This document shows positions 14,832 to 64,000 of a DNA stretch of 64,000 bases, one piece after another; position 1 is the stretch's first letter; each line of letters starts with the position of its first letter. A model generated the notes under the pieces. The model did no database searches. It saw only the letters and a program-made list of their open reading frames with translations, and was not told the DNA's origin. Source of the DNA: Stegostoma tigrinum (Eukaryota); contig NC_081369.1 of NCBI RefSeq assembly GCF_030684315.1, forward strand, positions 10,082,035 to 10,146,034. Direction: 5' to 3'. The position numbers were made by a program, and so were the translations under genes.

Positions 14832-15733
14832 CCAGTTGAGCTGGACATTGGTGCTAATGAGTGAAGAAATTCAGTTTAATTATTATTAGTAAAGGGAAAG
14901 TACTGGAGAACTTCATGAGAAAAAAAGGCTAAGTGGACTGGTCCTGCTTATAGTGTTAGCTATAGATTTTTAATAGAGTTTACTGCAGACATAGTGGACA
15001 TATTGGATTTAATATTGGAGAATTCCCTACAGCTCTGAATTGGATAATACCATATATAATTTAACTGTTGCAAAAAAGACAAATAAAGAATATGTGGAAT
15101 TGAAGGTAAGTTAGCCTAACTTTCAATCTGTTATAAGGCACGGAGTAACAAGATGCTTAAAATCAGATGTGAACTTATGAAAACTTATTTGTTTTCTCCA
15201 GTTTGACGCTGAGTGCATTTTTAGTTCTATAAGAACTAAAAGTTGGAACATTATCTCAGTATAAAGGGACAGGAATATAGACTGAGAAGAGGAATAATTT
15301 ATATGCTCAGAGTGACAGGAATCTCTAGAATTCTCAATCCCAGAGGGAGATGAATGTCAGTCATTGATAATGTTTAAGACTAAGGTTGATAGACTTGTGA
15401 GCCCTGGGAAATCAAAAAATAATAGTGATCAGGAAAGAAACTGGTACTAAGGTTGCAGGTCAGCCATCACATAATTGAATAGAACAGCAGACTTGAGTAG
15501 TCTGTAAAGCCTCTTTATATTCTGATAGCTAGTGATGTTTTATTGAACGAGAGTACAATATAAAAGTATGCTATTATTCATGTGCATCGCAACTATACCC
15601 AAATTTCTGGTAAGTATTCACCAGTGAGAAGGATCTTGAGGACAGTGTGAAACAGGCTGATATGCTCAAACAGGTTGATGTTAGGAATGACAATAGGCTA
15701 CAAATTTTGAAAAACATGCAGATAGATAAGTCA

Positions 15734-16910
15734 AGGACCGCAACTTTCCCCTCACCGTGGTCGAGAACGCCCTTGACCGCGTCTCCCGCATTTCCTGCAA
15801 CACATCCCTCACACCCCGCCCCCGCCACAACCGCCCAAAGAGGATCCCCCTCATTCTCACACATCACTGCACCAACCTCCGGATACAACGCATCATCCTC
15901 TGACACTTCCGCCATCTACAATCCGAGCCCACCACCCAAGACATGTTTCCATCCCCACCCTTGTCTGCTTTCCGGAGAGACCACTCTCTCCATGACTGCC
16001 TTGTTCGCTCCACACTGCCCTCCAACCCACCACACCCGGCACCTTCCCCTTTAACCGCAGGAAGTGCTACACTTGCCCCCACACCTCCTCCCTCACCCCT
16101 ATCCCAGGCCCCAAGATGACTTTCCATATTAAGCAGAGGTTCACCTGCACATCTGCCAATGTGGTATAATGTACCCACCGTACCCGGTGTGGCTTCCTCT
16201 ACATTGGGGAAACCAAGCAGAGGCTTGGGGACCACTTTGCAGAACACCTCCGCTCGGTTTGCAATAAACAACTGCACCTCCCAGTCGTGAACCATTTCAA
16301 CTCCCCTTCCCATTCTTTAGGTGACATGTCCATCCTGGGCCTCCTGCAGTGCCACAATGATGCCACCCAAAGGTTGCAGGAACAGCAACTCATATTCCGC
16401 TTGGGAACCCTGCAGCCCAATGGTATCAATGTGGACTTCACCAGCTTCAAAATCTCCCCTTCCCCCACTGCATCCCAAACCAGTCCAGTTCGTCCCCTCC
16501 CCCCACTGCATCACACAACCAGCCCAGCTCATCCCCTCCCCCCACTGCATCCCAAAACCAGCCCAGCCTGCCTCTGCCTCCCTAACCTGTTCTTCCTCTC
16601 ACCCATCCCTTCCTCCCACCCCAAGCTGTACCTCCATTTACTACCTACTAACCTCATCCCACCTCCTTGACCTGTCCATCTTCCCTGGACTGACCTATCC
16701 CCTCCCTACCTCCCCACCTATACTCTCCTCTCCACCTATCTTCTTTTCTCTCCATCTTCGGTCCGTCTCCCCCTCTCTCCCTATTTATTCCAGAACCCTC
16801 ACCCCATCCCCCTCTCTGATGAAGGGTCTAGGCCCAAAACGTCAGCTTTTGTGCTCCTGAGATGCTGCTTGGCCTGCTGTGTTCATCCAGCTCCACACTT
16901 TATTATCTTC
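15734..16910 (+). mobile_element. 5'-truncated Penelope-like element inserted into a CR1 RT; 13-bp TSD
   Basis: GIY-YIG region and 3' UTR are nearly identical to the copy at 60.4-61.57 kb. TSD gatagataagtca (15721-15733) / gatagatcagtca (16911-16923). The empty site is in copy B at 43951. Confidence 0.92.
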
Positions 16911-18050
16911 GATAGATCAGTCACTTGGGCCAAATGGGATATACCCAATGTTTTTGCAGGAAGTGAGGGAAGAGATTGCCGTGCCTTTGGCAATGATCTT
17001 TGCATTCTCACTGCCCACTGGAGTAGTACTAGATGATTGGAGGGTGGCAAATATTATTCCATTGTTCAAGAAGGGGAACAGGGATAATACTGGGAATTAC
17101 AGACCAGTCAGTGTTACTTCTGTGGTGGGCAAATTATTGGACAAGATTCTGAGAGATAGTATTTATGATTATTTAGAAAAGCACAGTTTGATTATAAATA
17201 GTCAGCATGGCATTGTGAGGGACAGGTTAGCCTCACAAGCCTTACTGAATTCTTTGAGGATGCCACAAAACACATTCAAGAAGGTTGAGCAGTGGATGTG
17301 GCATATATGGATTTTAGCAAGGCATTTGATAAGGTTCCTCCTGGTAGGCTCATTCAGAACGTTAGGAGGCATAGGATTCAGGGAAATTTAGCTGTCTGGA
17401 TACAGAATTGGCTGTCCATTAGAGGACAGAGGGTGGTATTGGATGGAAAGTATTCAGCCTGGAGCTCTGTGACAAGTGGTGTTCTGCACGGATCTGTTCT
17501 GGGACCTCTGCACTTTGTGATATTTATAAATGACTGGAATGAGTAAGTGGAAGGATGAGTTAGTTAATTTGCTGATGGCCTGAAAGTTGGTGGATTTGTG
17601 GATATTGTGTACAGCTGTTGTAGTTGCAACAGAACATTGACAGGAGGCAGAGCTGGGCAAAGAAGTGGCAGATGGAATTCAACCTGGTAAAATGTGAACT
17701 GATTCATTTTGGAAGGTTGAATTTGAATGCAGAATACAGGGTTAATGGCAGAATTCTTGGCAGTGTGGAGGAACAGAGGGAGCTGGGGGTCGACGTCCAT
17801 AGATCCCTCAAAATTGTTATCCAGGTTGATAGGGTTTTTAAGAAGGTATGCTGCAGTTCTACAAAACACCAGTTAGACCACACTTGGAATACGCTGTTCG
17901 GTTCTGGTCACCTTATTAGAGGAAGGATGTGGAAGCTTTAGAGAGGTTGCAGATGAGATTTACGAGGACACTGCATGGACTGGATGGCAGGTCTTATGAG
18001 GAAAGGTTGAGGGAGCTGGGGCTTTTCTCACTGGAGCGAAGAAGGATGCC
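16911..18050 (+). mobile_element. CR1-type LINE ORF2 (RT) fragment, decayed
   Basis: DDWRVANIIPLFKKG, NYRPVSVTSVVGK, YMDFSKAFDKVP, SGVLHGSVLGPL, WQMEFN..KC. Confidence 0.92.
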
Positions 18051-20369
18051 CATTTGACTTCCTAAGTGTTTATTTCCATGCTGTATAACTATTCAGCGCA
18101 TTGATCGTGCAACAAACAAAGATGTTAAAGTGATATCAGTTAATGAATGACATGGAAAAGCGCTGAAAGTCAACTTGAAATCAAACACCATGGCTCAATG
18201 TGTATTTGTTGGGTGAGAATGTTGAAATCTTTCAGTTGTCAAAACCTAATTTAGCCTTTTCAATTTTAGTTTGTAGTTTGCATTAATCTGAACTCTGCAG
18301 TTTAAATTCTCCATTTACGTAACCTAAACCCCTTAAACCCTTTTTTTTTCATAAGCATTGAAATGAAAATGCAGTTTAATTAAGAAACAGCTGAAACTGG
18401 ATCCTTATTACATGCTATTTATGTTGTGAGCATGTAGAAGTAGACAGCTTAGTGCAATTTATTTGAAAGTTTCAGAGTTAGGTGTCTCAATGAGTTTAGT
18501 AGAAGAAGAAGAGACACATGGTTTCTTATTTGCCAAAAATGAGCAGTCAAGCAGTGAGTATAATTCATCAGAATTTAAGTGAAATACTTAGTTCATTTTA
18601 GTTTGTATTTGGGACTCCAGACAATTTTCTCTTTTTTAAAATCTATTCAAGTAGAAGATTGATAATGATATATATATACACTTACAGTAAGGTTTAATGA
18701 GCACAATTGCTTAATAAGATAAATTAAACTATGTATGACAGATGTGACAGGTCAGGTTACTGCTTCAGGATGTGGGAGCTGATGAAGACCAATGTGATCC
18801 ACAGTGAACTCATTTGTAGCAAATTTGGATAAGAGTGGAGGAGATGGAGCCCAAGCTGCAGGTAATGATTCATGACCTGGTCATTGGCTCTCATCAAAGG
18901 TCAAAATCAATGAACAATGAACATACTGCCCGTCTTCCTCAATTTAACAGCTTTACCAAAGTTAACTGTTTGGACGTGGGACTGTAAATCCACCTCCTCA
19001 TGCATGCACAACATCCCATTCCAGATTGGAACCTTCACCCCAAGGACATCAGCAGGATTGTTTTGGAGTAGGCCTCTGCACAATACTCAGAATGAAACAA
19101 ACGTACCAGATTCTACCAACTATCTGACAAAGTTGTCCAAAGCGCATTCGCACTTCAATTAACCAAAGCTTTTTGACATTAGAGATAAACTGAATCAACT
19201 GGACCTCAAGTCTAAAATGTTGCAGAAAATATATTTGTTTACAAGCCTGCTGACAAAGAGCACTGCCAGAGTTTACATTGTAGTTTATATAATAGGATCA
19301 ATCCCCTCATTGAGTATTGGTCAAGTTAAATTGACCACTGTATTTCACTGCAGCATTCATCCAAATTTCTGTAGTTACTGTGACAAATAGTTGTTGATTA
19401 TACTGGAGAATCAGGATGATTAGCTAGTTATGGCATTTTTCCATGGATTCACAGATTTACCACGTGATTTTACAGTTTTTCTTAACTTTGTAACGTTAAT
19501 GCTTATAGAGTAGTATGTATCTACAATTGTTTCTTCAGCGGAGCTATACAATCGGTAATACAGTACACCATTCAGCCTATGAATTCTGAATCTGGACACC
19601 GTTCAGCTGCATGGCTCCCGATACCTGAATACTATGAATGACCACAAATCTACTTTCACAATCTTAAGTGTTGACATATTCAGCCTCTTGGACAGCAAGG
19701 TCCAGATTCCTCTGAATGTTTGTGTGAAAAGGAAATGTTTCCTCTTTTCATTCATGAATGTTTGGAGTAAATTTTAAAGATATTCTCCTGTTTTGGATTT
19801 TAAATAATGTAAGTTCAGCAATGGATATGGGGTCCAAAAAGGAGAATTTATTTTTGAACAGTGAATTAGGTAGACCTGAAACGGGATCCAGGTTACAGGC
19901 ATTATTGCAAGCTAAGTCGTGCACGAGCATTAACATTTCAAGGAATAACAGTCATAAGGAAAAAAGTAATGTTAAAGTTGTATCAGACTTGGACAGGCGG
20001 CACGGGGATTTGTTTTTGCACTAAATCCGCTCGAGGAGAGCACATCAAAACAACTTATCAAAACATGCCGGGAAAGTCTTCTCTCTAGAAAATTGACGGC
20101 TGAGGCTGACTTGATCAACACTTGTCAAATCATGAAAGAAACTCAGCACGTCTGGCAGCATGTGTGGACAGAGATATATAGTGTTAATGTCATGAGTCCA
20201 CTAGGACTCTTCAGAATTAAAGGAGGTTGCAAAGTTGTTTTTATGCTGATGACCTAGGGTTATGTTCCGGGGGCGTGGGGAGATGGGTGGTGTTCCCGGG
20301 GAATGGGGGCAATTAGAAAGCAACATGTACGCATTGTGAGGGTGCCCAGAGTAAAATATACAAACCATC

Positions 20370-22070
20370 AGACTATAACACATTGGAGCAGAAGTGGACA
20401 TTCAGTTCAGCAAGTCAGCTCCACCTTCAGTGAGGTAATGGCTGATCTAATAATCTCATTTCCTACCTTTTCACTATAACCCTTGATTCCATTACCTATT
20501 TAAAAACCTATCTAGCTCAGATTTGAATATCATTAAAGATTCAGTTTTTACAGTTCTCCGTGGGAAGGAATTCTTCAGATTCACTGCCGTCAGATAGAAG
20601 AAATTCCTTTGCATCTTTGTCTTGAATGTACAGACCCTGATTCTGAGATTATGTCTTCTAAACTAAACTTTTCCATGAGGGGATACAACCTTTCAGCACC
20701 TAACCTATCAGGTTCCATAAGAACCGTCTACATTTTAATAAGATTGCTTTTCACTCTAAATTCCATTGATTAGCCTGCTCCGCCTGTTTTTATAAGACGC
20801 TCCCTCTTTGTCTGGTATCAGCTGAGTGAAACCTTCCTGGTCGGCTTCCAATGCCAGTATGTCTTTCGTTAGAAAACGGTAATGAAGCCGTTCATGGTTT
20901 AAAAGCTACAGTCTGATTTGGGCCTTGCATACGTTTAACAAGTTTTCCCTACTGTATACTCCATTCCCTTTGACATAAAGGGCAATGTTCTATTTGCCTT
21001 CTATATTAACTTTGAAGTTTGGATTCTAGCATTTTTGTGATTCATGGACAAGGATTCAAAAATCGTTCTGTTCCATAGCTTTCTTCAGCCTTTATTATTC
21101 CTGGCAAAGTGTACTCCCTCACATTCTTCAAACTATTGCCCAATCATTATAACATGTTTATATTCCTCTGCAAAACCTGTGCCACCCTCACCAATTGGCT
21201 TCCCAACTGCTTTTGTGCCATCTGCAATGCTGGTTGTAGAACATTCACTTTCCTCATTCAAGTAATTAGTACATATTGTGAACAGTTGTGTCCACAACAC
21301 TGAAACCCATCAAGCTCCATTAGTGTCATAGAGATGTAGGGCATGAAACAGACCCTTTGGTCCAACTAGTCCATGCCGACAAGTGTGCCAAATTAATCTA
21401 GTCCCATTTGCCAGCATTTGGCCCATATGCTACTAAGCAATTTATTTTCACAAACCCATCCAGATTCCTTTTAAATGTTGTGATTGTACCGGCCTCCACC
21501 ACTGCTTCTGTCACCACCCTCTGTATGAAAACATTACCCCTTAGGCCTCTTTTAAATCATTCCCATGTCATCTGAAACCTATGCCCTCTAGTTTTCGACT
21601 CTTACATCCTGGGAAACGAGCTTGGCTGTACACTCTATCCATGACCTTCAAGACTTTATAAACCTCGATAAGGTTACCTCTCAGCCTCCAGTGCTCCAGA
21701 GAAAGTAACCCCAGTCTTTTAAGCTGTTCCCTATGGCTGAAACACTCCAACCCTGGCAACATCCTTGTAAATCTTTTCTGAATCCTTTCAAGTTTCACAA
21801 CATCTTTCCTATAGCTGGGAGACCAGAATTGAATGCAGCATTCCAAAACTGCCCCAACTAGCGTCCTGCAAAGTGACCTCTCAAATCCAATCCTCAGAGC
21901 AATGACCAAGAAAGGCAAGTGTACCAAACACCTTCTTCACTAAACTGTCAACCTGCGATTCTACTTTCAAGGAACTATGAACCTGCACTCCAAGGTCTCT
22001 TAGTTCAGCAACACTGCCCAGGACATTGCCATTAAATGTATTTGTAGGTTTCCATCCTGAACTGTGGAAG
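20370..22070 (-). mobile_element. Two adjacent CR1-type LINE 3' fragments
   Basis: ORF 21568 carries CIQFWSPSYRKDVVKLERIQKRFTRMLPG and RLRGNLIEVYK. A second CR1 subfamily 3' end lies at 20.37-21.3 kb. Confidence 0.8.
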
Positions 22071-23611
22071 GAAGATCTCTATAAAAGATTAGGTTAGAAA
22101 CCATCCAAAAAATAGCAGCTTGAATTTCTGTGGGACCATAGTTGCTTAACTTATAACAAGTAGAAGACAACAGCACCATCCTGACCAGCAAATCTTTTAA
22201 TAAATTCAAAGTTAGAACTGTGAGAATGGAATGCAGCAAATTCAGATAGACGCAGGTTACAGTACGTAAACGCAGCACTGCAAATAAGGCAGTTCATGTC
22301 AAATTGACAAGTCTCAAGCTAAAAGACTAAGGGAGGGTTCCAGTGGAGGGGCTGCTTGGAAGTGGATGAAAGAGTCCATGAAGCTGCATTGGAACTTCTG
22401 CCCCAGAGTTCAACATCATGAATTCATTGAGGTGGGTGCATAATGGGAGAAATTAAATTATTTGTTGAGTATTGATTACCAGCGTCTGAAAATAAAAAGA
22501 AAATTCACCATAGTCTTCCCATGCCAGAGGGCTGCTCTCTAAATTAGGTGGAAAATGAGAAGGAATATTTTATATTGACATCAGCCAGGACAAGAATTAA
22601 ACTCACACATTTGGTGTCGCTCTGCATTACAAAACAGACAATCAAATTAACTAATCTTCATTGGAATAGTGTATACCTTGAGGCTATTGTGAATCAAGGG
22701 CAAATTATGGGATTAGAAGAAAGGATGAAGTCAGAGTAAAGGAGAGACAGGGAAGAATCCAGAAGGGCACCAGTATTTGTGAATGTTTGGAGTTTGTGCT
22801 CCTTAACAACTAAAAGGAAGAAATAATGATTCTTGTTAAAGCTGTGTATGAAACAAAGTATAAAATGGAACTGGCAACTGAGACAGTCTGAGGTAGTTTT
22901 GATGGAGTGAGTGGTTTAAGAGGGTGCATGCAGTGGCTCATGGTACCGGTTATGGGTTTGGGATGAGGTGGGATCAGTTGAGCATTATTGCTGATAAATT
23001 CCTAGCACTTCTGCTGCATCTAGGGAGGATTAAATAATTATGGCAATACCCCATCATGTCCGCCCTCACTCGCTTTTGCAGTCCAGGAAGCAAGCCATCT
23101 AAACCAAACATGTAGCTGCTCTTAGGACAAACGGCATTTCCAGTGCATCCTGGCCAGACTTTTAATACAATTTATTCATTCTACTCTCTCTACTTCGACA
23201 TGTTGTTGGTTTGCCTCTTCTCCTTCGGTCAACATCAGTCAAAATATTCATTAAATTCTCTAATTTTGCATATGGCCTCTCAGTATCATTAACTGTTTTG
23301 TATCAATAGCTACCACAAAACGTTTTGCCACCTTTTTACTAACTAAAGGTTGTAGAAGACATTTCAGCTCCATTTTATTACAGCAGCCATTCAATTCTTT
23401 GACTCTTTACCAAATATTTTCACCTTGAATTCCACTATCAATTTACTGTGTTTGATCTGCTTGCACATGTGGATATTTCTGACTGTGTGTATTTGGATAT
23501 TTGTGTACTAGTGCCCATATATGAACGTGTGTTAGACTGCCTATGCATGCTTATATCTTTTTTGTATGTCTGTGTACATGTGCCAGAAAATTCTATAAAG
23601 TCCTATTCTGA

Positions 23612-24535
23612 CGTCATCTTCAGCTGCTTCACCAATGACATTCCCTCCATCATAAGGTCAGATGGGGATGTTTGCCAACAATTTCATAATGTTCAGCACC
23701 ATTCAATACTCCTCAGACACTGAAGCAGTCGATGTTCAAATGCAACAAGGTCTGGATAATATGCAGGCTTGAGCTGACAAGTGGCAAGTGACATTCGCAG
23801 CACACAAATGCCAGACTATGACCAGCACCAATAAAAGTCATTCTAACCACCACCCTTTGACATTTAATTATGTCACCATCACTGAATTCCCCACTAGCAA
23901 CATTCTGGGGGTTAATATCGACCACATAAACACAGCGGCTACAAGAGCAGGCCAGAAGCTAGGAATACTGTGGCCCGTAACTCATCTCCTGGCCACTGAA
24001 AGCCTGCCCACCTTTGACAAGGCATAAGTCAGGAGGGTGATGGAGTACTCCCCACTTGGCTGGATGAGTGCAGCCCCAACAATACCCAAGAAACCATTCA
24101 GGACAAAGCAGCCTGCTTGCTTGGCATTACATCCACAAACATCCACTCCATCCATCACCAATGCTCAGTTGCAGAAGTGTGTACTATCTACAAGAGGCGC
24201 TGCAGAAATTCACCAAAGATCTTCAGACAGCACTATCCAAACCCATGCCCACTTGCATCTAGAAGATGAGGGCAGCAGATATACGGAAGATCACCACCTC
24301 CAAGCTCCCCTTCAAGCCGCTCACCATCACGACTTGAAAATATATCACTGCTCCTTCACTGTCGCTGGGCCAAAATCCTGGAATTCCATCTTTAATGGCA
24401 TTGTGTGCCAACCTACAGCAGCTGAAATAACAGCGATTCAAGAGGGTGGCTTACCACCACCTTCTCAAGGGCAACTAGGGCTGGGCAAGAAATGCTGGGC
24501 AGTCAGCGATGCCTACATCCCACAAATGAACAGAA
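23612..24535 (+). mobile_element. Second CR1/L2-group LINE family, 3' portion
   Basis: IFSCFTNDIPS, DKWQVTFAAHKCQ and MEYSPLGWMSAAP, with a 3' tail gggcaactagggctgggcaagaaatgctgg. Confidence 0.8.
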
Positions 24536-25384
24536 AAACATGCTTTTCCTTGTTGGTTTATCTACAGTGGCTGCTGATACAGCGACCGCTTTATTTTAAA
24601 AATCTCGTCTCTGGTTTCAAATCACTTTAACAACTTGTACTTGCTGTAATTCTGACCTCTTCATCATCTTTAATTTTCATTAATAGTGGATATGCCCTGG
24701 GGTGCAACATTCCAAATTCAATTCAATTCACAGACAAACCTCTGCCTACCTCTCTTTTAAAGCCTGCTGTTTGATCAAGCACCAGTACTTGATGTTACTT
24801 AGTCGTAATCAAAATTTGGTAACGCTGTGAAGCGTCTGATGAACTTTATACATACGCTATACAATTGTCTTATTGTCACATGCTTTTCTGGCATGTGTAC
24901 AAAGACATACATAAATATATATAAGCTGTATATAGCTCTTGGTACGAAACAGTGAATTATACATGCTTGAGCGTGCGACTGTATAACTGTTTTTCTTTAG
25001 TTCTGTTTTTCTCGTCTCAATTCGTCCTTTTTTTAAATTCTTCTCATATGTCATTAACTCAATTCTGCTTAAAAGCTTCCACCGCAAAGAAGTCTGTTTT
25101 TGACAGTTTTTGTTTTCTAATACACGATTGTTGACACTCAAATGTGAACTGTTACAACTTATCTACTAAAATAGGTCACGACTTCTCGCTCGTTTTTATT
25201 GGATCTCAGCAAGTACCGTTAACATCATCGGAGTTCCGTTTTCTCTGTTAGAGCAGCTGACAGATAATCAGTTAGTTTTTCTTTCGAAGCAATCACATAT
25301 CCAGAGAACTAAGTCGTTCTTTATTGTGTTACTTCAAGCCAGGAAATGTTTCGAAAAAATGACAGTTGTGTCCAGTTATAATGC

Positions 25385-29596: not shown

Positions 29597-29651
29597 ATGT
29601 CGGCGAGAGCAGCGTTTCTCTTCATGGCTCTTCTGGTTATGCCTTGGCCCG
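29597..29651 (+). CDS. IgSF receptor exon 1: signal peptide
   Basis: MSARAAFLFMALLVMPWP plus 1 nt, donor gtactc. Hydrophobic leader in phase 1, which matches the V exon. Confidence 0.7.
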
Positions 29652-35273: not shown

Positions 35274-35317
35274 GCAAAGGGAGAAATTCGACGGAAGCAA
35301 GTCAGAATGGCGATCCG
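35274..35317 (+). CDS. IgSF receptor exon 5: cytoplasmic 1
   Basis: Branch-point-like actgac, then acceptor ctttctattag and donor gtaatg. 44 nt, phase 1-0. Translates (G)KGRNSTEASQNGDP. Confidence 0.78.
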
Positions 35318-43905: not shown

Positions 43906-43919
43906 TGATGTTAAGAAGG

Positions 43920-45942: not shown

Positions 45943-46089
45943 CTACTTAGTTCAGTTTAGTTTCTATTTGGGACTCGAGCCGATTTCTCTCCTTACTAGC
46001 TATTCAAGTAGAAAATTGATAATGGTGTTTATACACTGATAGTGAGTTTTAACGAGCACAATTAATTAATAAACTAAATAAACAATAAA

Positions 46090-48150: not shown

Positions 48151-48979
48151 GGAAATTACGAGGTTTTCAGTACTTCTCAAGAGCTCGTGCCTTCCTCCAA
48201 TGAAGCTACATTCAGCTGCTAAATGTCTCAGAATCCTGACAGAGTTAATTACATCTTTGAAAGTATCTTTAGAATTTTTCCTTCGTTTATAATTTCCGAG
48301 AAGACAAGGGCACCTCATAGCACAAATTGATCCATTTGTTGATATTTTGTTTTGACATTTTAAAACGAAATTGTACGGGCTCTGTTGATTACACCATTTC
48401 GTGTATCTTTGGGTATTCTTGCTGATTGAATTAACACTAAAACGTGGAGGCCTTATATTTCTATTACTCTTTTGCAGATGCTGCCAACGTCACTATCATT
48501 TTACAGCATCACGACATTTATTGGGAATAACAAAAATAACAGCGTTAATGGTTATTGTTGGGAAGTAGTTGAAACTAAGGTACTGTCAAAGGCAGGCCAC
48601 ACGTTTATTACAACATCGAAATAGGAAGCCAATAAACAACTCCACATTAAACCGATAAGCTGGAGAAACGAATGTTCCTTGAATGTGGACATTTAGAACA
48701 TAATGTTAACATTGGGAGTGGAAAACAAATCATCCCAGAGCAATAGTTGCTACAACATTGTTTCCATTAGATCTTCCCCACAAATGTACCTCACAAAGGA
48801 CAACAATCTCCTGTTGTCATTTAGACTTAAATGTTGTGAAGCTGATGAAAGACATTTTATTCAAAATGGAACTTGGGCATTAAGTATGAGAATTTAATTC
48901 TCGTATGATACTTTGATACTTTAACAGGGAGATGAGCAAATATTTCTTCTCAGAAAACGATACTTGTTTGACTTTTCCA

Positions 48980-53264: not shown

Positions 53265-54560
53265 GCTCAGCCTACCTTCATAAGACGTTCCCTCTACATC
53301 CGGTATTAGCTTAGTGAAAATTTCCAGGTGGTCCTCCAATGCCAGGAAATCTTTCGTTAGATAATGGCAATAAAGCTGCTCATAGTTTTCGAGCTACAGT
53401 CTAATTAGTGCCTTGCATGCTTTGAACAAATTCTCCCGATTGTGTATTCCATTCACTTTGAAATAAAGGGCAATATTCTATTTCCCTTCCATATTAACTT
53501 TTAAGCTTGTATTCTAGCTTTTTTGTGATTCGTGGACAAGGACTCAAAAATCTTTCCGTTCCATAGCTTTCTTCAGTATTTATTCAAGTCGATTATTCTT
53601 CCTGGCATTCTTCAAGTCCCTCACATTCTTCAAATTATTGCCCACTCGTGTAACATGTTGATATTCCTCTGCAAAACCTGTGTCATCCTCACCAACTGAT
53701 TTCCCACATGTCTTTGTGCCATCTGCAAACCTGGCAATAGAACATTCACCTTCCTCATTAAAGACCTTAATATATATTGCGAACAGTTGTGTCCGCAGCA
53801 CAGAACCCCACCAAGCTCCACTAGAGTCATAGAGATGTAACATATGGAAACAAGCCCTTCAGTCCAGCTCGTCCATGCTGACCTGACATCCTAAATTATT
53901 CTAGCCCCATTTGCGAGCATTTAGCCCATATACCACTAAACAATTTCTTCTCATGTACTCATACAGATGCTTTTTAATTTTTTTAATTGTACCAGTCTCC
54001 ACCAGTGCTTCTGTCACCACCCTCTACATGAAACTGTTAAGCCTTAGGCCCCTTTTTAAATATTTCCACTCTCATCTGAAACCTATGCCCTCCAATTTAA
54101 ACTCCCATACCCTGGGGAAACGATCTTGGCTGTTGACTCTACCCATGCCTATCATGATTTTATAAACCCCTATCAGGCTACATCTGAGCCTTCAATGCTA
54201 CACGGAAAGTAACCTCAGTCTATTGAGCCTTTTCCTATGGCTCAAACACTCTAACCCTGGCAACATCCTTGCAAGTATTTTCTGAATCATTTCAAGTTTC
54301 ACAACATCTTTCCTTTAGCTGGGAGAACAGAATTGAATGCAGCATTCCAAAAGTGGCCTACTTAACGTCCTGCAACATGATTTCTCAAATCCGATGTTCA
54401 ATGCAATGACCAAGAAAGGCAAGCGTACCAAACACCTTCTTCACTATACTGTCAATCTGTGACTACTTTCAAGGAACTAAGAACCTGCACTCCAAGTTCT
54501 CTAACTTCAGCAACACTTTCAAGCACCTTGCCATTAAGTGTATTTGCAGGTTTCCTTCCT
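53265..54560 (-). mobile_element. CR1 fragments (paralogous to 20.77-22.07 kb)
   Basis: GSVLRTQLFAIYI...RFADGTK, colinear with copy A. Confidence 0.78.
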
Positions 54561-55724
54561 GAACTGTGGAGGGAAAATCTCTACATAAGATGAGGTTAGA
54601 AACTGTCCCAAAAATAACAGCTTGGTGTTCTGTGGGCCATGGGTCGGAAAAGTGGATGAGTCTGAAAGTTGTTGTTTAACCTATGCTAGGTAGAAGAGAA
54701 CAGCACCATCCTGACCAACAAAACTGCTAACGCATTCAGAGTGAAAACTGCGAGAATGTTGTGCAGCAAATTCAGAGGGACAAAGGTTACAATATGCAAA
54801 TAGAGCAGAGCAAATAAAACAGTCAATGTCAAACTGACAAGTCTCATGCTCAAAGACTGATGGAGTGTTCGAGTGGAGGGGTTGCTTGGAAGTGAATGAT
54901 AGAGTCCATGGAACAGTATGGGGACTCCTGCCCCAGAGTTCAACGTCATGTTCTGGCTTAAATTAATTGAGGTGGGGGCATGTGGGAGAAAGTAAATTAC
55001 TTACAGAGTATTGATTGCCAGCATCTGAATATAGAAAGAAAATTCACCATAGACTTATGGCACCATAGGCTGCTGTCTAAATTGCACATGAGAACAGAGG
55101 TTGTGAAGGAAAATATATTATGTTGACCTCAGCCAGTGCAAGAATTACACTCGGTGCCACTCTGCATCACCAACCAGCCATTCAAAATAACTAGTCCTCA
55201 TTGGAATGGTGAATACCTCGAGGCTATTGTGAGTCCAGGGCAAATTGTGGAATTGGAAGAAAGGATGAAATCAGAGTGAAGGAGAGGGAGGGAAGGGCAT
55301 CAGTATTTCTGATTCTTTTTGAGCTTGAGTTCCTTAAGAATTCAAAGGAAGAAAAGTGATTCTTACTAAAGTTGTGCATGAAATAAAGACTAAAATAGGA
55401 CTGTGAACTAGAACAGTGTGAGGTAGTGTTGATGGGGAGAAAGATTTAAGAGAGTGCATGTGGCGGCACGTGGCACCGGTTATGGATGTGGGATAAGGTG
55501 GGGTCAGTTGAGTATTATTGCTGACCAATTTTCTCACACTTCTGCTGCATCCAAGGAGGATTAAATGATTATGATAATCCCCCATCATGTCCACCCACAC
55601 TTGCATTTGCAGCCCAGAAAGCAAGCCATCTTAAGCAAGCACCCAACCACTCTTAGGACAAACTGCATTTCCAGTGCATCCCGGCCAGAATTTCAATACA
55701 ATTTATTCATTCTACTGCCCTTGT

Positions 55725-56408
55725 CCTTCTGGATGCAAGTGATAATGGGTTTAGTCAGCGCTGTCTGAGGATCCTTGGTGAATTTCTGCATTGCATCTTG
55801 TAGATAGTACACACTGCTTCTACTGAGCACTGGTGATGGGCAGAGTGGACACTTGTGGATGTAGTGCCAATCAAGTGGGCTGCTATGTCCTGGATGGTGT
55901 CAAGCTTCTTGAGTATTGTTGGGGCTGCACTCAGCCAGACTACTGGGGAGGATTCCATCACAATCCTGTTCGATGCCTTGTCGATGGTGGACAGGCTTTG
56001 AGGAGCCAAGAGGTGAGTTACTGGTCACAGTATTCCTAGCTTCTGGCCTGCTCTTGTAGCCACTGTGTTTATGTGGTGACTCCAGTTGAGTTTCTGGTCA
56101 ATGTTAACGCCCAGGATGTTGACAGCAGGGGATTCAGTGATGGTGACACCATTGAATGCCAAGGGGTGGTGATTAGAATGTCTATTTTTGGTGCTGGTCA
56201 TAGCCTGACATTTGTGTGGTGTGAATGTCACTTGCCACTTGTCAACCCAAGCCTGGGTATTATCCAGACCATGTGCATTTGAACATGGACTGCTTCAGTG
56301 TCTGAGGAATAATGAATGGTGCTGAACATTGTGCAAACATCAACGAACATTTCCATTTTGACCTTATGATGGTGGGAAGGTCATTGATAAAGCAGCTGAG
56401 ATGATGTC
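55725..56408 (-). mobile_element. Second-family LINE 3' portion (inverted relative to copy A)
   Basis: TFTPHKCQAMTS, ILGVNIDQKLNW and MESSPVVWLSAAP on the minus strand. Confidence 0.82.
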
Positions 56409-58131
56409 TAAATAGGAATTTACAGGATTTTCTGGCGCATGTACACAGACATACATAATCTTATATGAGCACATAGGCAGTTATATACACATTCATATAT
56501 GAGTACAAGTATATAACTATACAAATATTCAAAAGGACACAGACATAAATATCTACATACGCGGACCAGGCCAAATACAGTAAATTGACAGTTGATTTGA
56601 TGTCTCTCAAGTGTGAACTCTTACAACTTATCTACGAAAATAGATCACGACTTCTCGCTCGTTTTTATTATCATTTAGCTAATCATAGCGCTTGGAGAGC
56701 AGAACTTCATCACAGCTAATAGCATATCGGAAATACTTGTGGTTAGGCACTGCGTGCATTTCAGCATATGCTGGTTAACATGGCGCTCATCCTACCTTGT
56801 TTGACGTTCGGAAGAAAAATATTTTAAGAAACGTATTTGTAAGTTCGCGTCAGTCAACCAAACACTTCTACTGTCGCTCTGCAATATCTATGTTTAGCGA
56901 TATCCTCAGCGTTCTGATTCTGAAAAGCAATATGCGATTACATTACCCTGAAGTCAACTCAATCGTCGTTGTCATTCTGAGTTTGTCTTTAATTCAATAC
57001 CTGCTGTTTCTGCTGCTGCTGCTTCATTCTGGGCCGTTTAATTTGCAGGTGTTCTCAGTGGTGTGTCGCATTGCTTTACACTTTCATTTACACAGCCATT
57101 TGTAGGACCAGAAATCAGGTTCCAAGTGTACTTAAAGCAGAATGGAAATCAAATATTATGAACTGCATACATGACAAGATGGCGGCAGGGTAAGTTGCTC
57201 CAATTTGGAGTTCCATCCTGCTCGCCGGGTGGAGCTCCAAATTCGCATGACGGAATCGACCTCCTTGGTGTGTTAGCGATTGGAGCGGCGCCTGCATCGT
57301 TGTGGAGATGGGACTTGGAATCAAACCTGGACGTTTTTTTTTCCCCTTTTGGCTCTGTTAAAATATTTTAATTCTTTTTTTTGTTATCAAACGGGCGGCT
57401 GCGAATGGCGACTCTGTGCAATTCTCGCTGTACTTATGTATTTCTATACTTAGATTAGATTAGATTCCCTGCTATATATAATTAACTTTGGAGAAAAGTA
57501 GATTCTTTTTCTCTGTGAGAACATCTGACAGAGAATCAGTTGTGCTTTTCTTTCGAGGGAATCACTGCACGATTGACTACGTCCAGAGAGCAAAGTCCTT
57601 CGTTATTGTGTTACATCAAGCCAGGAAACATTCAGAAAAAAATGACAATTATATCCAGTTATAACGGAGAATAGCATTTTGGCTAAATAAAAACTTCTCA
57701 GGGAAATGAATTGTCGAATTTTTTTGGATTGCACATTCCAAAAGAATGCTCCTGTTATGGTAGAAAATGGCATAATACAAATCACCCATTGATTTTCTGC
57801 GGCGCATTTTGCGGCCACTTGAGCTACCATAGTGCTTTATAGGCAACGTGACATGTTTGAAAAGTCTACATTTGCCATGTTGTCGCTCTCATGGTGGAAA
57901 CATGGTTCTCACACTGCACAAAAAAAGAACCCTCCCAATAACTTACTTCAGTGAAGTTGGTTGAGGGATAAATATTAGCTAGGACACAATCAATACGATA
58001 AGTGATGGTACAAACCATCTTTTATCCACCGCTTTTTAAAAACAATTTCGCAGGAGTATATCCACATAGTATATCATCTATAAATGCATCACAATCTGAC
58101 TACAAAGTGACACACAAGCAACATGACACGG

Positions 58132-59327
58132 TTAGCAAAGTGTAGAGCTGGAGGAACACAGCAGGCCAAGGCAGCGTCAAAAGAGGAGGAAAGCTGACGT
58201 TTCGGGTTGGGAAAAGTCCTAATCTGGCCCTGACTGCGACAACCTCAACTGAAATAACATCCAGAGCCTCCAAAAGTGGTTTTCTCTACGAATCCTCAAG
58301 CACACGCTCTCAACAATGCGCCAACATCTTCTGGCACTACATTATCCCAGCTCAGAGTCTCCCTGTCTCAGACCGGCAAAGAACCCCTTCCGTTCTTCAT
58401 TCTACGCAGCATTAAAGAACACTTCTACTCCACCCTGTCTGACATTAAAAAAAAACATAAGTACACTAATCGTACCAGTGTCTACCATCGAACACAGACC
58501 TCTCCGACCTCCCAATTCTTCCTCCCCATTTCTGAAGCGGAGTCCCGACCCGAAACTGCTGCGTTCCTCCAGCTCCACACTTTGATATCTCTGACTCTAG
58601 CATCTACACTTCTCACTATCTCAGTTGACTACTGACCCCACTGAGAACGTTTTTCCAAGCATGCCCACTTGAAAAAGTTGTCCTCCTTCATCAGGAAAGA
58701 GCTCAGAGAGTCTCTCTCCCACTGCAACCGTCTGGTAATCTCTTTGGCCTTGAAAGTCTTTGAACACATACTCAAACAAATCAGGTACTACAGCCAGATC
58801 TCCTTTCACCGTATCAGACTACGAAATTGGGTCATCCCCAATGGACTCAAATCTACATTCAGGCCATCCTAATATAGCCCTGACCGCGACAGCTCTAAAT
58901 AAACAACAACTGAGCCTCCAAAAACTGTTTTCTGTATCGATCCTCAAGCACACACTCAACAATGTGCCGACATCTTCTAGCACTACTATCAAAATCACCA
59001 CAGCTCAGGCCCTCCTTCTCACAGACCTGCAAGGAACCTGAACTGTTCTACATTCTGTGCAGGATCCACTGTCTTAAACTGCACTTTTAATCCACACTGT
59101 CTGTCATTAAAATACGTAAGTAGACTAAACTTACCTGAGCCTTCAACCAAACACGGGTCTCTTCCATCACACCAACCCCCCACCCCCAAGCCATCCTCCT
59201 CATCTCTGAAGAAGGGTCCCAATCGCAAGCGTCCCCTTTCTTGTCCCCCTGATGCTGCCTGGCCTGCTGTGTTTCTTGTGCTCCACCTTGTTATCTCCGA
59301 CTCCGGTACCTGCAATTCTTCCCATCT
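58132..59327 (+). mobile_element. Composite non-autonomous Penelope derivative (inverted end, ORF N-term piece, end, ORF N-term, end) with 13-bp TSD
   Basis: TSD caacatgacacgg at 58119-58131 and 59328-59340. Internal repeat ~58218-58470 / ~58868-59125. ORF 58669 carries the Penelope N-terminal motif SF..IRLRNWVIPNGL. No RT. Confidence 0.8.
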
Positions 59328-59927
59328 CAACATGACACGGACTGTTATGAGGTTCTTGACTATCGTTTTCATTTACACAGTTTAGTTCTGCGAAGTGAAA
59401 TTGATGGCCACTCGTTTATAATCTACCCCAGCATACTCTTAGTTGCCAAAGATCTTGGGCTGCTGTGTCAAGAGTTGTGATGTTAGTTTGCCGGGTTATC
59501 AAGAATCAGAGGCAAAACTTCCACTCAATGTTCCGAATTCCACGAAAGTTCTGGCTCCGGATTTACATTGGAAGATGGGAGCAATGGGGAGAAAAATGTT
59601 ACAGCTTAATAGTATGACATTGCGACTACCTCTTCATAAAATGTGTTTCATGTGCATTGAGTTCTGTAAGAGTCCTCAGGAAATGCAATAACCCCATCAA
59701 CTTCACATGTCTCAGCTCTATCATCTGTATCACCAAGTGATATAAGTATATTTTATTATCGCATAAGGCATCATTAACTTACTTTTGAAATATCTCTGCT
59801 TGTGCCGGAAGCAACAGAGGAAACCGAATTGTTCATTGCACAATCTTGTTACCAATAGTAGATAAAAGAAATGACTTGCATGCAGATGCATAGCCATCCA
59901 AAGAATTCACAACTATGCGTTACTTTC

Positions 59928-61569
59928 TCACTTCCTACAGACTAAGGGGGTGGCCATGGGCACCCGCATGGGCCCCAGCTATGCCTGCCTCTTTGTAGGT
60001 TACGTGGAACAGTCCCTCTTCCGCACCTACACAGGCCCCAAACCCCACCTCTTCCTCCGGTACATTGATGACTGTATCGGCGCTGCCTCTTGCTCCCCAG
60101 AGGAGCTCGAACAGTTCATCCACTTCACCAACACCTTCCACCCCAACCTTCAGTTCACCTGGGCCATCTCCAGCACATCCCTCACCTTCCTGGACCTCTC
60201 AGTCTCCATCTCAGGCAACCAGCTTGTAACTGATGTCCATTTCAAGCCCACCGACTCCCACAGCTACCTAGAATACACCTCCTCCCACCCACCCTCCTGC
60301 AAAAATTCCATCCCCTATTCCCAATTCCTCCGCCTCCGCCGCATCTGCTCCCACGATAAGACATTCCACTCCCGCACATCCCAGATGTCCAAGTTCTTTA
60401 AGGACCGCAACTTTCCCCCCACGGTGATTGAGAACGCCCTTGACCGCGTCTCCCGCATTTCCCGCGACACATCCCTCACACCCCGCCGCCGCCACAACCG
60501 CCCCAAGAGGATCCCCCTCGTTCTCACACACCACCCTACCAACCTCCGGATACAACGCATTATCCTCCGACACTTCCGCCATTTACAATCCGACCCCACC
60601 ACCCAAGACATTTTTCCATCCCCTCCCCTGTCTGCTTTCCGGAGAGACCACTCTCTCCGTGACTCCCTTGTTCGCTCCACACTGCCCTCCAACCCCACCA
60701 CACCCGGCACCTTCCCCTGCAACCGCAGGAAATGCTACACTTGTCCCCACACCTCCTCCCTCACCCCCATCCCAGGCCCCAAGATGACATTCCACATTAA
60801 GCAGAGGTTCACCTGCACATCTGCCAATGTGGTATACTGCATCCACTGTACCCGGTGCGGCTTCCTCTACATTGGGGAAACCAAGCGGAGGCTTGGGGAC
60901 CGCTTTGCAGAACACCTCCGCTCAGTTCGCAACAAACAACTGCACCTCCCAGTGGCAAACCATTTCCACTCCCCCTCCCATTCTCTTGATGACATGTCCA
61001 TCATGGGCCTCCTGCACTGCCACAATGATGCCACCCGAAGGTTGCAGGAACAGCAACTCATATTCCGCCTGGGAACCCTGCAGCCATATGGTATCAATGT
61101 GGACTTCACCAGTTTCAAAATCTCCCCTTCCCCTACTGCATCCCTAAAGCAGCCCAGTGCATCCCCTCCCACCACTGCACCACACAACCAGCCCAGCTCT
61201 TCCCCCCCACCCACTGCATCCCAAAACCAGTCCAACCTGTCTCTGCCTCCCTAACCGGTTCTTCCTCTCACCCATCCCTTCCTCCCACCCCAAGCCGCAC
61301 CCCCAGCTACCTACTAACCTCATCCCACCTCCTTGACCTGTCCGTCTTCCCTGGACTGACCTATCCCCTCCCTACCTCCCCACCTACACCCTCTCCACCT
61401 ATCTTCTCTACTCTCCATCTTCGGTCCGCCTCCCCCTCTCTCCCTATTTATTCCAGTTCCCTCCCCCCAACCCCCTCTCTGATGAAGGGTCTAGGCCCGA
61501 AACGTCAGCTTTTGTGCTCCTGAGATGCTGCTTGGCCTGCTGTGTTCATCCAGCCTCACATTTTATTAT
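59928..61569 (+). mobile_element. Young 5'-truncated Penelope-like element with intact RT C-half, thumb and GIY-YIG ORF; 15-bp TSD
   Basis: Uninterrupted 434-aa ORF (GVAMGTRMGPSYA, RYIDD, CNRRKCYTC, NVVYCIHCTRCGFLYIGET). TSD ctatgcgttactttc (59913-59927) / ctatgcattactttc (61570-61584). Confidence 0.96.
61479..61506 (+). ncRNA. Minimal hammerhead ribozyme motif in the Penelope 3' terminal repeat
   Basis: CTGATGA-aGGGtctaggCCC-GAAA-CG-TC: conserved hammerhead core boxes, a short helix II and a palindromic ACGT in place of helix III. Confidence 0.6.
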
Positions 61570-61814
61570 CTATGCATTACTTTCGATGGTTTGACAACTG
61601 TTGTAGTGCAAAGAAACATAAAAGACAGGTAGCAAACTAATGAATGATATGCACAGCATTTAGGTAGTCTGGAAATACCATCTGTGAATTAAACTGGTCA
61701 GAACGTCAGAAGAGCTACTTGTGGTATGTGAACAATACCTATTAAATGAAGGCATCAAAGGTACCATTCAGAGAAAAATACGCTTGTAAACATGATTTTT
61801 TCCCCATTAACTTC

Positions 61815-64000
61815 AAGGAAGTGGGAAATGGGCATTGCTGGCTGGCGAGCACTTATTTCCCATTCTGAGCTGCTCTTGGGGCGGTAATGAACTGCCTTCT
61901 TGAACTGCTGCAATCCACGTGAGAAGGTGATCTGCCGCATCCTTCAGGAGGGAATTCTAAGATTTTGACCCAGTGACAGTGAGGGTTTGGTGATACTTTT
62001 CCAAGTCAGATGGTTAGCGGCTCGGAGGGTCACTTGCACGTGTTCCCATGTATTTGCTGTCTTTGTCCTTCTAGATGGCAGTATTCCAGGGTCGGGACAT
62101 GTTGTCAAAGGATTTTTCATGCATTTCTGCAGTGCACTTTGTTGTTGGTATACAGACCTGCTATTGAGCATTGGGACCGTGAAGGGAGTAAGTGCTTCTG
62201 AATGTGCTGCCATACAAGTGGAAGACATTGTCATGGATGATATCAAGATTCTTCAGAGATGTTTGAGCTGCGGCCACCCAGGCAAAGTGAGGAGTGTTCC
62301 ATTACACTCCTAATTTGTGCCTTGTAGATGGTGGGCAGAATTTGGGTGTCACAAGGTGATTTATTCACTGCAGTATTCCTAGCCTCCAAACAGCTCTTGT
62401 ATTCATTGTGTTTTTGTAGTGATTCCAGGTGATTGTGGAGATTCAGTGATGGTAACACCATCGAATACCAAGGGCAGTGGTTGGATTGTCATTTATTTAA
62501 AGTGGTCATTGCGGGCCTTTGTGTGTTATGGATGTTACCTGCCTTTTGTCAGCCCACGACTGAATATTGTCCAGATCTTGTTGCATTTGAACACAGACGG
62601 GTTCAGTAGCCAAAGATTCATAAATGTTGCTGAAGCTTTTGCAAGCATTGCCGAATATCCCCACTTCTGGCCTTATGAAGGAAGGAAGATCGTTGATGAA
62701 ACAGCCAAGGATGGTTGGATTTGGACACTACCCTGGAGAACCCCTGCAAGGATGTTCTGGAGCCGAGATAACTGTCTTCCAACAACGGTGACATCTGTGC
62801 GGGTATGTCCCCAATATACATTGAGTCCAGTTTTGCACGGAACCATTGATGTCACATTCAGCCCAATGTGGCCTTGACTTCAAGGCAATCACTCACACCT
62901 CACCATGAATACAGATCTTTTTTCCATGTTTGGACCAAAGCTGGAACGAGGTCAGGAGCTGAGTGGCCCTGGCAGAATCCAACTGGATGTCAGTCGGCAA
63001 AATATTATGAGCAGTTGATACTGGTTAGCAATGTTGGTGACAACTTCCATCACTGTAATTATGATTGAGGGTTGAATGATGGGGCAGTTATTGGCTGATT
63101 GGGCTTGGTTTGCTTTTTGAGCATAAAGCATACCTGGGTAATCTTCCACAATGCCAGCTTGATGTCAGCATTATAGCTGCCTTGGAAAGCCTTGGTTAGG
63201 GGAGGAGCAAGTTGTGGAGCACGAATCTTCACTAATACACTGGAATGCTGTCTGGGCTCATAGGCGTTGCAGTATCCAGTGATTCCAACAATTATCTTGA
63301 TATCACGTGGGGTGGATCGAATTGACTGAGGACTGGTGTTTGCGATATTGCGGACCAGAGCAGGAGACTGAGATGGATTATCCACTCAGCACTTCTAGCT
63401 GAAGTTTACTCTGAATGCTTCAGTCTGATCTTTTTCAGTAGTGTGTTGGGCATTTCGAATATTAAGGATGGGGATATTTGTGAAGCCTCCTCCTCCTTCA
63501 GAAAATTGTGTAATTATCCACCACCATTTATGCCTGGATGTGACAGGACAGCAGAGCTTAGATGTGGCCCATTGGCTGTGGGAACGCTGAGCCCTGTCTA
63601 TCACTTGCTGCTCATGCAATTTGGCGAGCAAATCGGCCTGTTTGGTGGCCAGGTTGAGCCTCAGTTTTATGTATGTCTGGTGTTGCTTCACTGAACCAGT
63701 ATCAATCCCCTGGCTTGATGCTAATAAGGAATTGGGGTGAATTGCCATGCTGCTGCAGATTGTGCTGCAGTACAAGTCTGCTGCTGTTGATGCTGCACAG
63801 CACATCATGGATGCCCGGTCATAAATCTGCAGTATCTGTTTTAAACTTGTCCCATTTAGCACAGTGATATTGCTGCACAATGCAATGGAGGATATTTTCA
63901 ATATGTAGACGGGACAGTTTCTCCACAAGGCTGTGCTCCTACCGCTCCTACCAGTATTTTCATGGGCAGATGCATCTGCTGCCGGCAGACTGGTAAGGAT
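61815..64000 (-). mobile_element. Second-family LINE ORF2, decayed
   Basis: AGVLQGSVQIQP, IYKAQIRSVMEHS and KIRAPQLAPPL. The 3' tail (gggcattgctggc, read on the plus strand) is at ~61830. Confidence 0.82.

What the first reader, a model, noticed from the sequence alone, without database searches (positions are those of the whole stretch)
14846..64000. Duplication of the receptor's upstream region predicts a tandem receptor cluster, with a paralog just past the window edge
Seen: the ~11.7 kb ending about 3 kb upstream of the receptor's leader recurs colinearly at 42.9-64 kb. The match includes shared TE junctions and non-TE sequence; identity looks like roughly 80% by eye (not computed). Homology is still running at base 64000, which corresponds to ~26550 in copy A. 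Inference: the duplicated unit is upstream region plus gene, so a second VJ-C1 gene or pseudogene should begin a few kb beyond the window. This fits birth-and-death expansion, and paired inhibitory/activating members are plausible.
Basis: partly seen in the sequence, partly recalled or inferred. Interest (0 to 1): 0.8.

Follow-up and report, generated by a model that had tools for sequence, protein, structure and literature searches.

The report
Old duplication flanking shark receptor gene
About 11.7 kb of repeat-rich DNA upstream of a shark immune-receptor gene was copied long ago to just downstream of that gene, which is ordinary for such gene families; this window cannot show whether a second gene copy follows.

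Summary
Window 14843-26553 recurs in the same order and direction at 42870-64000. Eight blocks give 8,604 aligned bases at 81.6% identity (K2P 0.21), and the match still runs at base 64000, which corresponds to 26553 in copy A, 3,044 bases before the receptor's ATG. Shuffled and reversed controls give nothing. Contigs from two samples of the same species span the new junction at 42870. A related species has contigs 90-95% like copy B, so the duplication predates that species split. Copy B is 1.8 times longer because of later mobile-element insertions.

The window holds one V-J/C1 receptor gene (29597-40884). Among 99 family proteins, none gave a V or C1 match anywhere else in the window.

The prediction of a paralogue a few kb past the edge could not be tested. 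Earlier scan notes, untested here, place the next such gene 35.5 kb beyond the edge and another 44 kb before the window. The scan also noted a similar duplication and prediction on another piece of this genome (s1-882464).

Verdict: a real but ordinary old duplication.

The parts
14843..26553 (+). Copy A of the duplicated block (11,711 bases). It ends 3,044 bases before the receptor's ATG.
42870..64000 (+). Copy B of the duplicated block (21,131 bases within the window). It begins about 2 kb after the receptor's stop codon, and homology runs to the last base of the window.
   Evidence: junction bridged by a 1,775-base contig (41963-43733) in runs X1 and X3
55711..56598 (-). Block inverted relative to copy A 23428-24279 (82.9% over aligned bases). 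It also belongs to a repeat family with copies at 13720-13962, 41653-42097 and 61821-62726.
15733..16908 (+). Insert specific to copy A: the 3' part of a Penelope-like element, 92% like 60400-61571. It is flanked by a 13-base target duplication (GATAGATMAGTCA).
   Evidence: (weak RVT_1 and GIY-YIG matches in the sister copy 59875-61251)
43711..43943 (.). Palindromic mini-element of about 240 bases, specific to copy B. It sits 33 bases away from the site of A's insert and is extremely abundant in the genome.
   Evidence: summed contig depth 7.7 million in the 43700-43899 bin of X1
45661..45944 (.). SINE-like insert specific to copy B with target duplication TACTT. It resembles the two 330-base units at 13003-13698.
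46232..51799 (-). 5.6-kb stretch present only in copy B, with an RT-like part in reverse orientation (49669-48997 is about 60% like 16915-17604). Contigs of the related species cross its left edge.
   Evidence: (records 15, 16 and 32 span 46232)
56599..62891 (.). 6.3-kb complex specific to copy B. It holds a short piece homologous to copy A (57500-57664), a Penelope-like element (59875-61571) and another copy of the inverted-block repeat (61821-62726).
20282..20773 (.). 492 bases present only in copy A.
29597..29651 (+). Receptor gene, leader exon (MSARAAFLFMALLVMPWP plus one base), followed by a GT donor.
29863..30168 (+). Receptor gene, single exon with V and J joined in the germline. It matches Pfam V-set and ends ...AGSGSLLTVC.
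32926..33222 (+). Receptor gene, C1-set exon.
34414..34518 (+). Receptor gene, membrane-spanning exon. There is no Lys or Arg in the hydrophobic core.
35274..35317 (+). Receptor gene, first cytoplasmic exon (GKGRNSTEASQNGDP).
36770..36839 (+). Receptor gene, second cytoplasmic exon (LRQRLTEENAAYANINLKANKVP).
40744..40884 (+). Receptor gene, last exon with stop codon. Compared with relatives its middle lies in another reading frame, and the exon expected before it was not found.

Best explanation
This is an old direct duplication of repeat-rich intergenic DNA next to a shark gene for a non-rearranging V-J/C1 membrane receptor.

Shown:
- The block 3-15 kb upstream of the gene is present again starting about 2 kb downstream of the same gene, on the same strand.
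- Divergence is even, about 0.21 substitutions per site.
- Both copies later took up their own mobile elements. Copy B gained about 9.4 kb more.
- The duplication, and the 5.6-kb insert in copy B, are older than the split from a related species whose contigs are 90-95% like copy B.

Inferred:
- The block is the visible left part of a tandem duplication of a unit made of upstream region, gene and about 2 kb of downstream flank (28 kb in copy A), produced by unequal crossing-over.
- A paralogue, or its remains, therefore lies downstream of copy B.
- Because copy B is already 1.8 times as long as copy A, that partner may lie tens of kb away rather than a few kb. It may be the gene that the scan noted 35.5 kb beyond the edge.

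The duplicated DNA itself shows no sign of function.
For: - Colinear same-strand chain with K2P 0.19-0.25 in all 8 blocks.
- No match in shuffled or reversed controls.
- The junction at 42870 is bridged by a 1,775-base contig with 2 mismatches in runs from two samples.
- The only other contig listed on 43063-43425 has 56 mismatches and 9 gaps. Copy A there has 58 and 9, so that contig is copy A.
- Contigs of the related species are 5-10% different from copy B where copy A is about 20% different.
- No 150-base window exceeds 88.7% identity, so there is no conserved or converted tract.
- Copy-specific inserts carry their own target duplications.
- The family clusters on single chromosomes elsewhere. 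In one search, 12 of 12 Heterodontus francisci hits, 5 of 5 Chiloscyllium plagiosum hits and 6 of 6 Scyliorhinus canicula hits each carry one and the same longest-contig length. Isoforms are included in these counts.
Against: - No V or C1 exon other than the one gene was found in the window with 99 family proteins. There is also no homology between 1-14.8 kb and the gene region. The array is therefore not a regular one.
- Earlier notes (untested here) list no VJ-C1 gene in the first 35 kb beyond the edge. About 32 kb of extra DNA would be needed between copy B and that gene.
- Summed contig depth over the gene's last exon is only 12.1 in X1, against 10.3 for the window's own contig. No second copy at 80% or more was laid there. 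This is weak evidence, because a copy of the same age would sit right at that threshold.
- The left edge in copy A abuts inserted repeats, so the original breakpoint and the mechanism are not recoverable.
Confidence: 0.55

Rival explanations
1. Only the intergenic block was duplicated, or the partner gene was later deleted. Homology ends soon after base 64000 and no gene belongs to copy B. The receptor genes noted nearby come from other, older events.
For: Earlier notes list no VJ-C1 gene within 35 kb beyond the edge (untested here). No second copy at 80% or more was laid on the gene's last exon. No gene remnant was found inside copy B.
Against: Copy B begins close behind the gene, in direct orientation, and is still running at the edge, as a tandem unit would. 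The family is multi-copy on one chromosome in every species seen.
Confidence: 0.3
2. One copy is a retro-copy: a LINE transcript that read through into several kb of downstream flank (3' transduction) and was inserted 5'-truncated at the other place.
For: Old LINE-type remnants in sense orientation lie at the left end of both copies. The left edge of homology lies in such sequence (read by eye).
Against: At least 7.7 kb of flank would have been carried along. No A-rich or simple-repeat tail lies between 26000 and 29700. The blocks contain elements in both orientations and one inverted piece. tblastx found no LINE-like match for copy B's left flank within the window.
Confidence: 0.07
3. The two blocks are two insertions of one very large composite mobile element, not a local duplication.
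For: Much of the block is made of old mobile-element remnants.
Against: In the sampled unique part, only the window's own contig and one matching copy A were listed. There are no terminal repeats or element-wide coding frame, and the blocks are a patchwork of unrelated old elements.
Confidence: 0.05
4. Assembly artefact: one locus was assembled twice.
For: None.
Against: The copies differ at 18% of aligned sites and by many copy-specific inserts. Separate contigs for both copies and for the junction occur in runs from two samples.
Confidence: 0.01

Closest known systems
Tandemly duplicated immune-receptor clusters that evolve by birth and death (for example KIR/LILR in the leukocyte receptor complex, the SIRP cluster, teleost NITR genes). 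Recalled from general knowledge, not from a call.
   Same: There is a direct duplication beside an Ig-superfamily receptor gene of a multi-copy family. The copies decay evenly and are bloated by mobile elements. Family members share one chromosome in other species.
   Different: Only the non-coding upstream part of a possible unit is visible. No second gene was seen. At 81.6% identity the event is far older than typical primate receptor duplications.
Segmental duplications as usually defined in genome surveys (at least 1 kb and at least 90% identity; the definition is recalled).
   Same: It is longer than 1 kb, intrachromosomal, direct, and rich in interspersed repeats.
   Different: Identity is 81.6%, below the usual threshold. 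It is an ancient duplication rather than a recent one.
UrIg and UrIg2, the non-rearranging shark V-J/C1 antigen-receptor-like genes (PMC12227049 and PMC10751288; passages found by term search).
   Same: The gene beside the duplication has a germline-joined V-J exon and a C1 domain. Its C1 exon's best solved relative is UrIg2 (9dmx, E 5e-14).
   Different: According to those passages, nurse shark UrIg2 has ten Ig domains. This gene has one V and one C1, followed by a membrane anchor and a short tail. The papers do not mention ITIM or SIRP (0 occurrences).
SIRP-alpha/beta/gamma
   Same: Automatic names of the closest proteins say 'tyrosine-protein phosphatase non-receptor type substrate 1-like'. 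SIRP-gamma and SIRP-alpha are among the solved C1 matches.
   Different: SIRPs have V-C1-C1 (recalled). This gene has a single C1 exon.

Membership tests
Tandem gene duplication in a birth-and-death receptor cluster | Two copies on one chromosome, adjacent, in direct orientation | tested here: met
   Met for the non-coding block only: same strand, start-to-start spacing 28,027 bases. The junction is confirmed by contigs.
Tandem gene duplication in a birth-and-death receptor cluster | Each unit holds a gene copy or its remains | not testable with these tools
   DNA beyond base 64000 could not be fetched. There is no second V or C1 exon inside the window.
Tandem gene duplication in a birth-and-death receptor cluster | Other family members nearby on the same chromosome | not tested
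   This rests only on earlier scan notes: genes 44 kb before the window and 35.5 kb beyond it. In other species, all hits from one species share one chromosome-sized contig length.
Segmental duplication (at least 1 kb, at least 90% identity; definition recalled) | Length of 1 kb or more | tested here: met
   8,604 aligned bases over 11.7 kb.
Segmental duplication (at least 1 kb, at least 90% identity; definition recalled) | Identity of 90% or more | tested here: not met
   81.6% overall; no 150-base window exceeds 88.7%.
LINE 3' transduction | Sense-oriented LINE at the 5' end of the copied block | tested here: inconclusive
   RT remnants in sense orientation lie near the left end. The edge itself was read by eye only, and one search gave no support.
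LINE 3' transduction | A 3' tail and target duplication at the ends of one copy | tested here: inconclusive
   No tail was found at 26000-29700. The end of homology lies outside the window, and A's left edge is overlaid by later inserts.
Elasmobranch V-J/C1 membrane receptor family (auto-named SIRP-like, NCR3LG1-like or tapasin-related-like) | V-set domain with the J motif in the same exon, followed by a C1-set exon | tested here: met
   Pfam V-set E 2.1e-10 and C1-set E 1.6e-9. The exon is continuous and ends GSGSLLTV. It is 82% (V) and 71% (C1) identical to the Chiloscyllium plagiosum protein P0155.
Elasmobranch V-J/C1 membrane receptor family (auto-named SIRP-like, NCR3LG1-like or tapasin-related-like) | Cytoplasmic tyrosine motifs of the ITIM/ITSM kind, as in long-tailed relatives | tested here: inconclusive
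   Relatives carry LTYAxL and xVYAxV. Here the proximal motif reads AAYANI. The distal one is lost in the frame that ends at the conserved stop codon. One expected exon was not found.
SIRP family | V-C1-C1 ectodomain (recalled) | tested here: not met
   There is one C1 exon only between the V exon and the membrane exon.

The most novel reading that the evidence does not exclude
The duplicated block marks one step of a repeat-driven expansion. Unequal crossing-over between old LINE remnants repeatedly copied 'upstream region plus gene' units of the shark non-rearranging V-J/C1 receptor family. Each paralogue would then have inherited the same upstream block, and the bloated spacing of about 60-70 kb between the noted genes would be the same unit swollen by mobile elements. 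If so, the block could be used genome-wide as a marker to order the family's duplications in time.
Probability: 0.2. Interest if true: 0.4.

Novelty: new member of a known kind. Interest (0 to 1): 0.28.

Why it matters
By itself it matters little. Old duplications next to multi-copy immune-receptor genes are expected. Its use is practical:
- It gives a dated landmark in the history of a shark receptor family that automatic pipelines mislabel. The event has K2P 0.21 and is older than the split from a related species that differs by 5-10%.
- It tells annotators where to look for a paralogue or a dead copy.
- It shows that distance estimates such as 'a few kb beyond' are unsafe in this genome, where one copy has nearly doubled in length through insertions.

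Tried and rejected
- **Reaching DNA beyond the window.** The protein searches returned no protein of this genome. (C1 frame) was blank within its length limits. One search gave mostly giant multi-Ig proteins plus family members of other sharks. Searches gave the family in other species only. A metagenome scan for the window's last 70 bases found nothing.
- **Expression.** No RNA run holds the gene, so the exon model was not checked against transcripts.
- **Extension of homology to the left.** A local alignment of 13000-14842 against 40900-42869 found only a 54-base repeat match (score 33; shuffle mean 13.9, shuffle maximum 17).
- **LINE at copy B's left edge.** By eye, and from a recalled motif, the LINE remnant seemed to continue further left in copy B than in copy A, which would suggest crossing-over between LINE copies. 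tblastx gave no support. I keep this only as a speculative reading.
- **A 'shared' Penelope-like junction.** Rejected: the two inserts lie 33 bases apart and A's has its own target duplication.
- **Conserved or converted tracts within the block.** None found.
- **Rfam families in the window.** None at gathering score.
- **The missing cytoplasmic exon.** A phase-aware scan and a relaxed local tblastn with the tails of 13 relatives found nothing convincing.
- **PRARP comparison.** The defining paper (Fu et al. 2019) is not held. I saw only its title in a reference list, so no membership test was made.
- **Supplements.** Supplementary files of papers were not consulted.
- **Spliced model.** All searches were done exon by exon.
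Full report
**The window.** It is 64,000 bases with no N. It carries many interspersed repeats and, on the + strand, one gene for an Ig-superfamily receptor.

**Check of the observation.** A self-BLAST, repeated with more permissive settings, shows that 14843-26553 (copy A) recurs in the same order and on the same strand at 42870-64000 (copy B).
- There are eight blocks. Seven are direct. One (A 23428-24279 against B 56598-55711) is inverted.
- Global alignment of the blocks gives 8,604 aligned bases, 81.6% identity, 897 transitions, 687 transversions and 87 gap events.
- K2P is 0.214 overall and 0.19-0.25 for every block.
- The last block reaches base 64000, which corresponds to 26553 in copy A. 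The leader ATG is at 29597, 3,044 bases further on.
- With copy B shuffled 20 times or reversed, no alignment passes E<1e-10. The longest hit is 34 bases, against 11,397 bases aligned for the real pair.

**History of the two copies.**
- Copy B is 21,131 bases long and copy A 11,711. The difference is mostly DNA found only in B:
  - a SINE-like piece at 45661-45944 with target duplication TACTT;
  - a 5.6-kb stretch at 46232-51799 with a reverse-oriented RT-like part;
  - a 6.3-kb complex at 56599-62891, which includes a Penelope-like element (weak RVT_1 and GIY-YIG matches in the frame 59875-61251).
- Copy A has its own 1.2-kb Penelope-like insert (15733-16908). It is 92% like the one at 60400-61571 and is flanked by a 13-base target duplication. 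Copy A also has 492 private bases at 20282-20773.
- The 240-base palindromic element in B (43711-43943) lies 33 bases from the site of A's insert. This apparent shared junction is really two independent insertions.
- Truly shared old elements do exist. RT remnants lie at colinear places in both copies.
- No 150-base window of the alignment exceeds 88.7% identity (162 windows, mean 77.0% with gaps counted). This gives no sign of selection or gene conversion. The block looks like neutrally decaying DNA from one event.

**Independent DNA.**
- Four runs of 'organism A' hold 0.88-0.89 of the sampled words of the gene region. Runs of 'organism B' hold 0.05-0.06. No RNA run was listed.
- I laid contigs of X1 and X3 (two samples of organism A) and of X5 and X11 (organism B) on 40500-46499.
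- In X1 and X3, a 1,775-base contig covers 41963-43733 with 2 mismatches. It bridges the junction at 42870.
- A second contig lies on 43063-43425 with 56 mismatches and 9 gaps. Copy A differs from copy B there by 58 mismatches and 9 gaps, so that contig is copy A.
- Both copies and the junction are therefore real, and that unique part has just these two listed copies at 80% or more.
- Organism B contigs lie on 42169-42874, 43270-43680 and 45944-46398 with 5-10% mismatches. Copy A is about 20% different over the same places. Since organism B is closer to copy B than copy A is, the duplication is older than the species split, by about two- to three-fold in divergence.
- Three organism B contigs cross position 46232, so the 5.6-kb insert is also older than the split.
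- No listed organism B contig bridges 42874-42960. The junction itself is not shown in that species.

**The gene.** I read the exons from the sequence and from relatives.
- Exons: leader 29597-29651; V-J exon 29863-30168 (Pfam V-set; ends AGSGSLLTVC); C1 exon 32926-33222 (Pfam C1-set); membrane exon 34414-34518 (no Lys or Arg in the core); cytoplasmic exons 35274-35317 and 36770-36839; last exon 40744-40884.
- Splice phases agree from the leader through 36839.
- The exon that relatives have before the last one was not found.
- In the last exon, the start and the end match relatives in one frame and the middle matches in another. The distal LTYAxL-type motif of relatives is therefore not encoded in the frame that reaches the conserved stop codon. 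The tail is unsettled.
- The exons were never joined; every search was made exon by exon.
- The closest protein is P0155 of Chiloscyllium plagiosum (V 82%, C1 71%). The family is found in sharks, rays and chimaeras under assorted automatic names.
- The C1 exon's best solved relative is UrIg2 (9dmx). SIRP-gamma, SIRP-alpha and B7-H6 follow among Ig constant domains.
- The V exon's full-length solved matches are weak: shark VNAR and TCR alpha.

**Is there a second gene?**
- Inside the window there is not. Of 99 family proteins run by tblastn, V and C1 matches fall only at 29.8-30.2 kb and 32.8-33.3 kb. The remaining hits come from non-Ig N-terminal parts of the query models: repeat-like matches at 16.3, 17.6, 44.6 and 61.0 kb, and two weak ones with E 0.003-0.009.
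- Nothing in 1-14.8 kb matches the gene region.
- Beyond base 64000 I have no sequence.
- The scan's earlier notes are leads that I could not test. They place VJ-C1 genes 43,992 letters before the window start and 35,520 letters beyond its end, and others 0.4, 0.9 and 7.1 Mb upstream. They list none in the first 35 kb beyond the edge, although a note at 16.3 kb beyond shows that stretch was read.
- If those notes hold, a cluster exists, but the nearest downstream gene is not 'a few kb' away. Either about 32 kb of extra DNA separates copy B from its gene, or the true partner has decayed or been deleted.

**Mechanism.**
- A direct repeat whose second copy starts just behind the gene, with even divergence, is what a tandem duplication by unequal crossing-over leaves. 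This is my preferred reading (0.55).
- The breakpoint gives no proof. In copy A the edge abuts inserted repeats with inverted arms at 14303-14830. My impression that a LINE remnant continues further left in copy B rests on a recalled motif and found no support.
- A read-through LINE retro-copy is unlikely. No tail lies at 26000-29700, at least 7.7 kb of flank would have been carried, and the content is of mixed orientation.
- A giant mobile element is unlikely, because only two copies were seen in the sampled part.
- An assembly artefact is excluded.

**Literature.**
- Term searches found the UrIg2 paper (PMC12227049; passages read). They also found the cartilaginous-fish MHC paper (PMC10751288; passages read), which mentions UrIg, NKp30 and PRARP as non-rearranging V-J genes.
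- Neither set of passages describes a one-V, one-C1 receptor family with a tyrosine-motif tail in sharks.
- Three searches of this library cannot show that such a description is not in print.

**Verdict.** The duplication is real, old and ordinary in kind. Its value lies in dating and mapping the receptor family.

Noticed in passing
window 43700-43943 (also 34777-35026, 40977-41189 and 16795-16919): A palindromic element of about 240 bases, built from the last 90 or so bases of the Penelope-like element. It is extraordinarily abundant: summed contig depth is 7.7 million (X1) and 13.6 million (X3) in one 200-base bin, against about 10-20 for single-copy DNA.
   Followed up: partly
window 40744-40884: The receptor's last exon matches relatives in one frame at its start and end, and in another frame in the middle. 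The distal ITIM-like motif of relatives is not encoded, although the frame stays open to the conserved stop codon. The exon expected before it was not found.
   Followed up: partly
protein P0155 (Chiloscyllium plagiosum), seen: The closest relative's gene model has two C1 domains that differ at 5 of 99 residues, and it has no membrane segment. This is either a recent C1 exon duplication with membrane-exon skipping, or a model that merges neighbouring copies.
   Followed up: no
window 23428-24279 against 55711-56598: One 0.9-kb block of the duplication is inverted between the copies, at the same divergence as its neighbours. The sequence is itself a member of a repeat family with three more copies in the window.
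   Followed up: partly
window 42874: All listed contigs of the related species (four records in two runs) stop at 42874, within 5 bases of the left edge of copy B. That species also has two or three different contigs (80-92% alike) for 42169-42874, so the flank left of the edge is multi-copy there.
   Followed up: no
window 43304 and bins 41300-41499 and 42300-42899: In both samples of the window's own species, the summed contig depth and a second variant contig at 43304 hint at a further copy (80% or more alike) of parts of this region elsewhere in the genome. It could be a third unit or just related LINE remnants.
   Followed up: no
window 13003-13698: Two tandem units of about 330 bases (83% alike) resemble the SINE-like insert at 45661-45944 (73-76%).
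   Followed up: no
window 29234-29287: The first 24 residues of the Chiloscyllium model P0155 match a stop-interrupted frame 310-360 bases upstream of the leader ATG (61% over 18 residues, E 0.19). This may be a conserved upstream piece or an alternative first exon in the relative.
   Followed up: no
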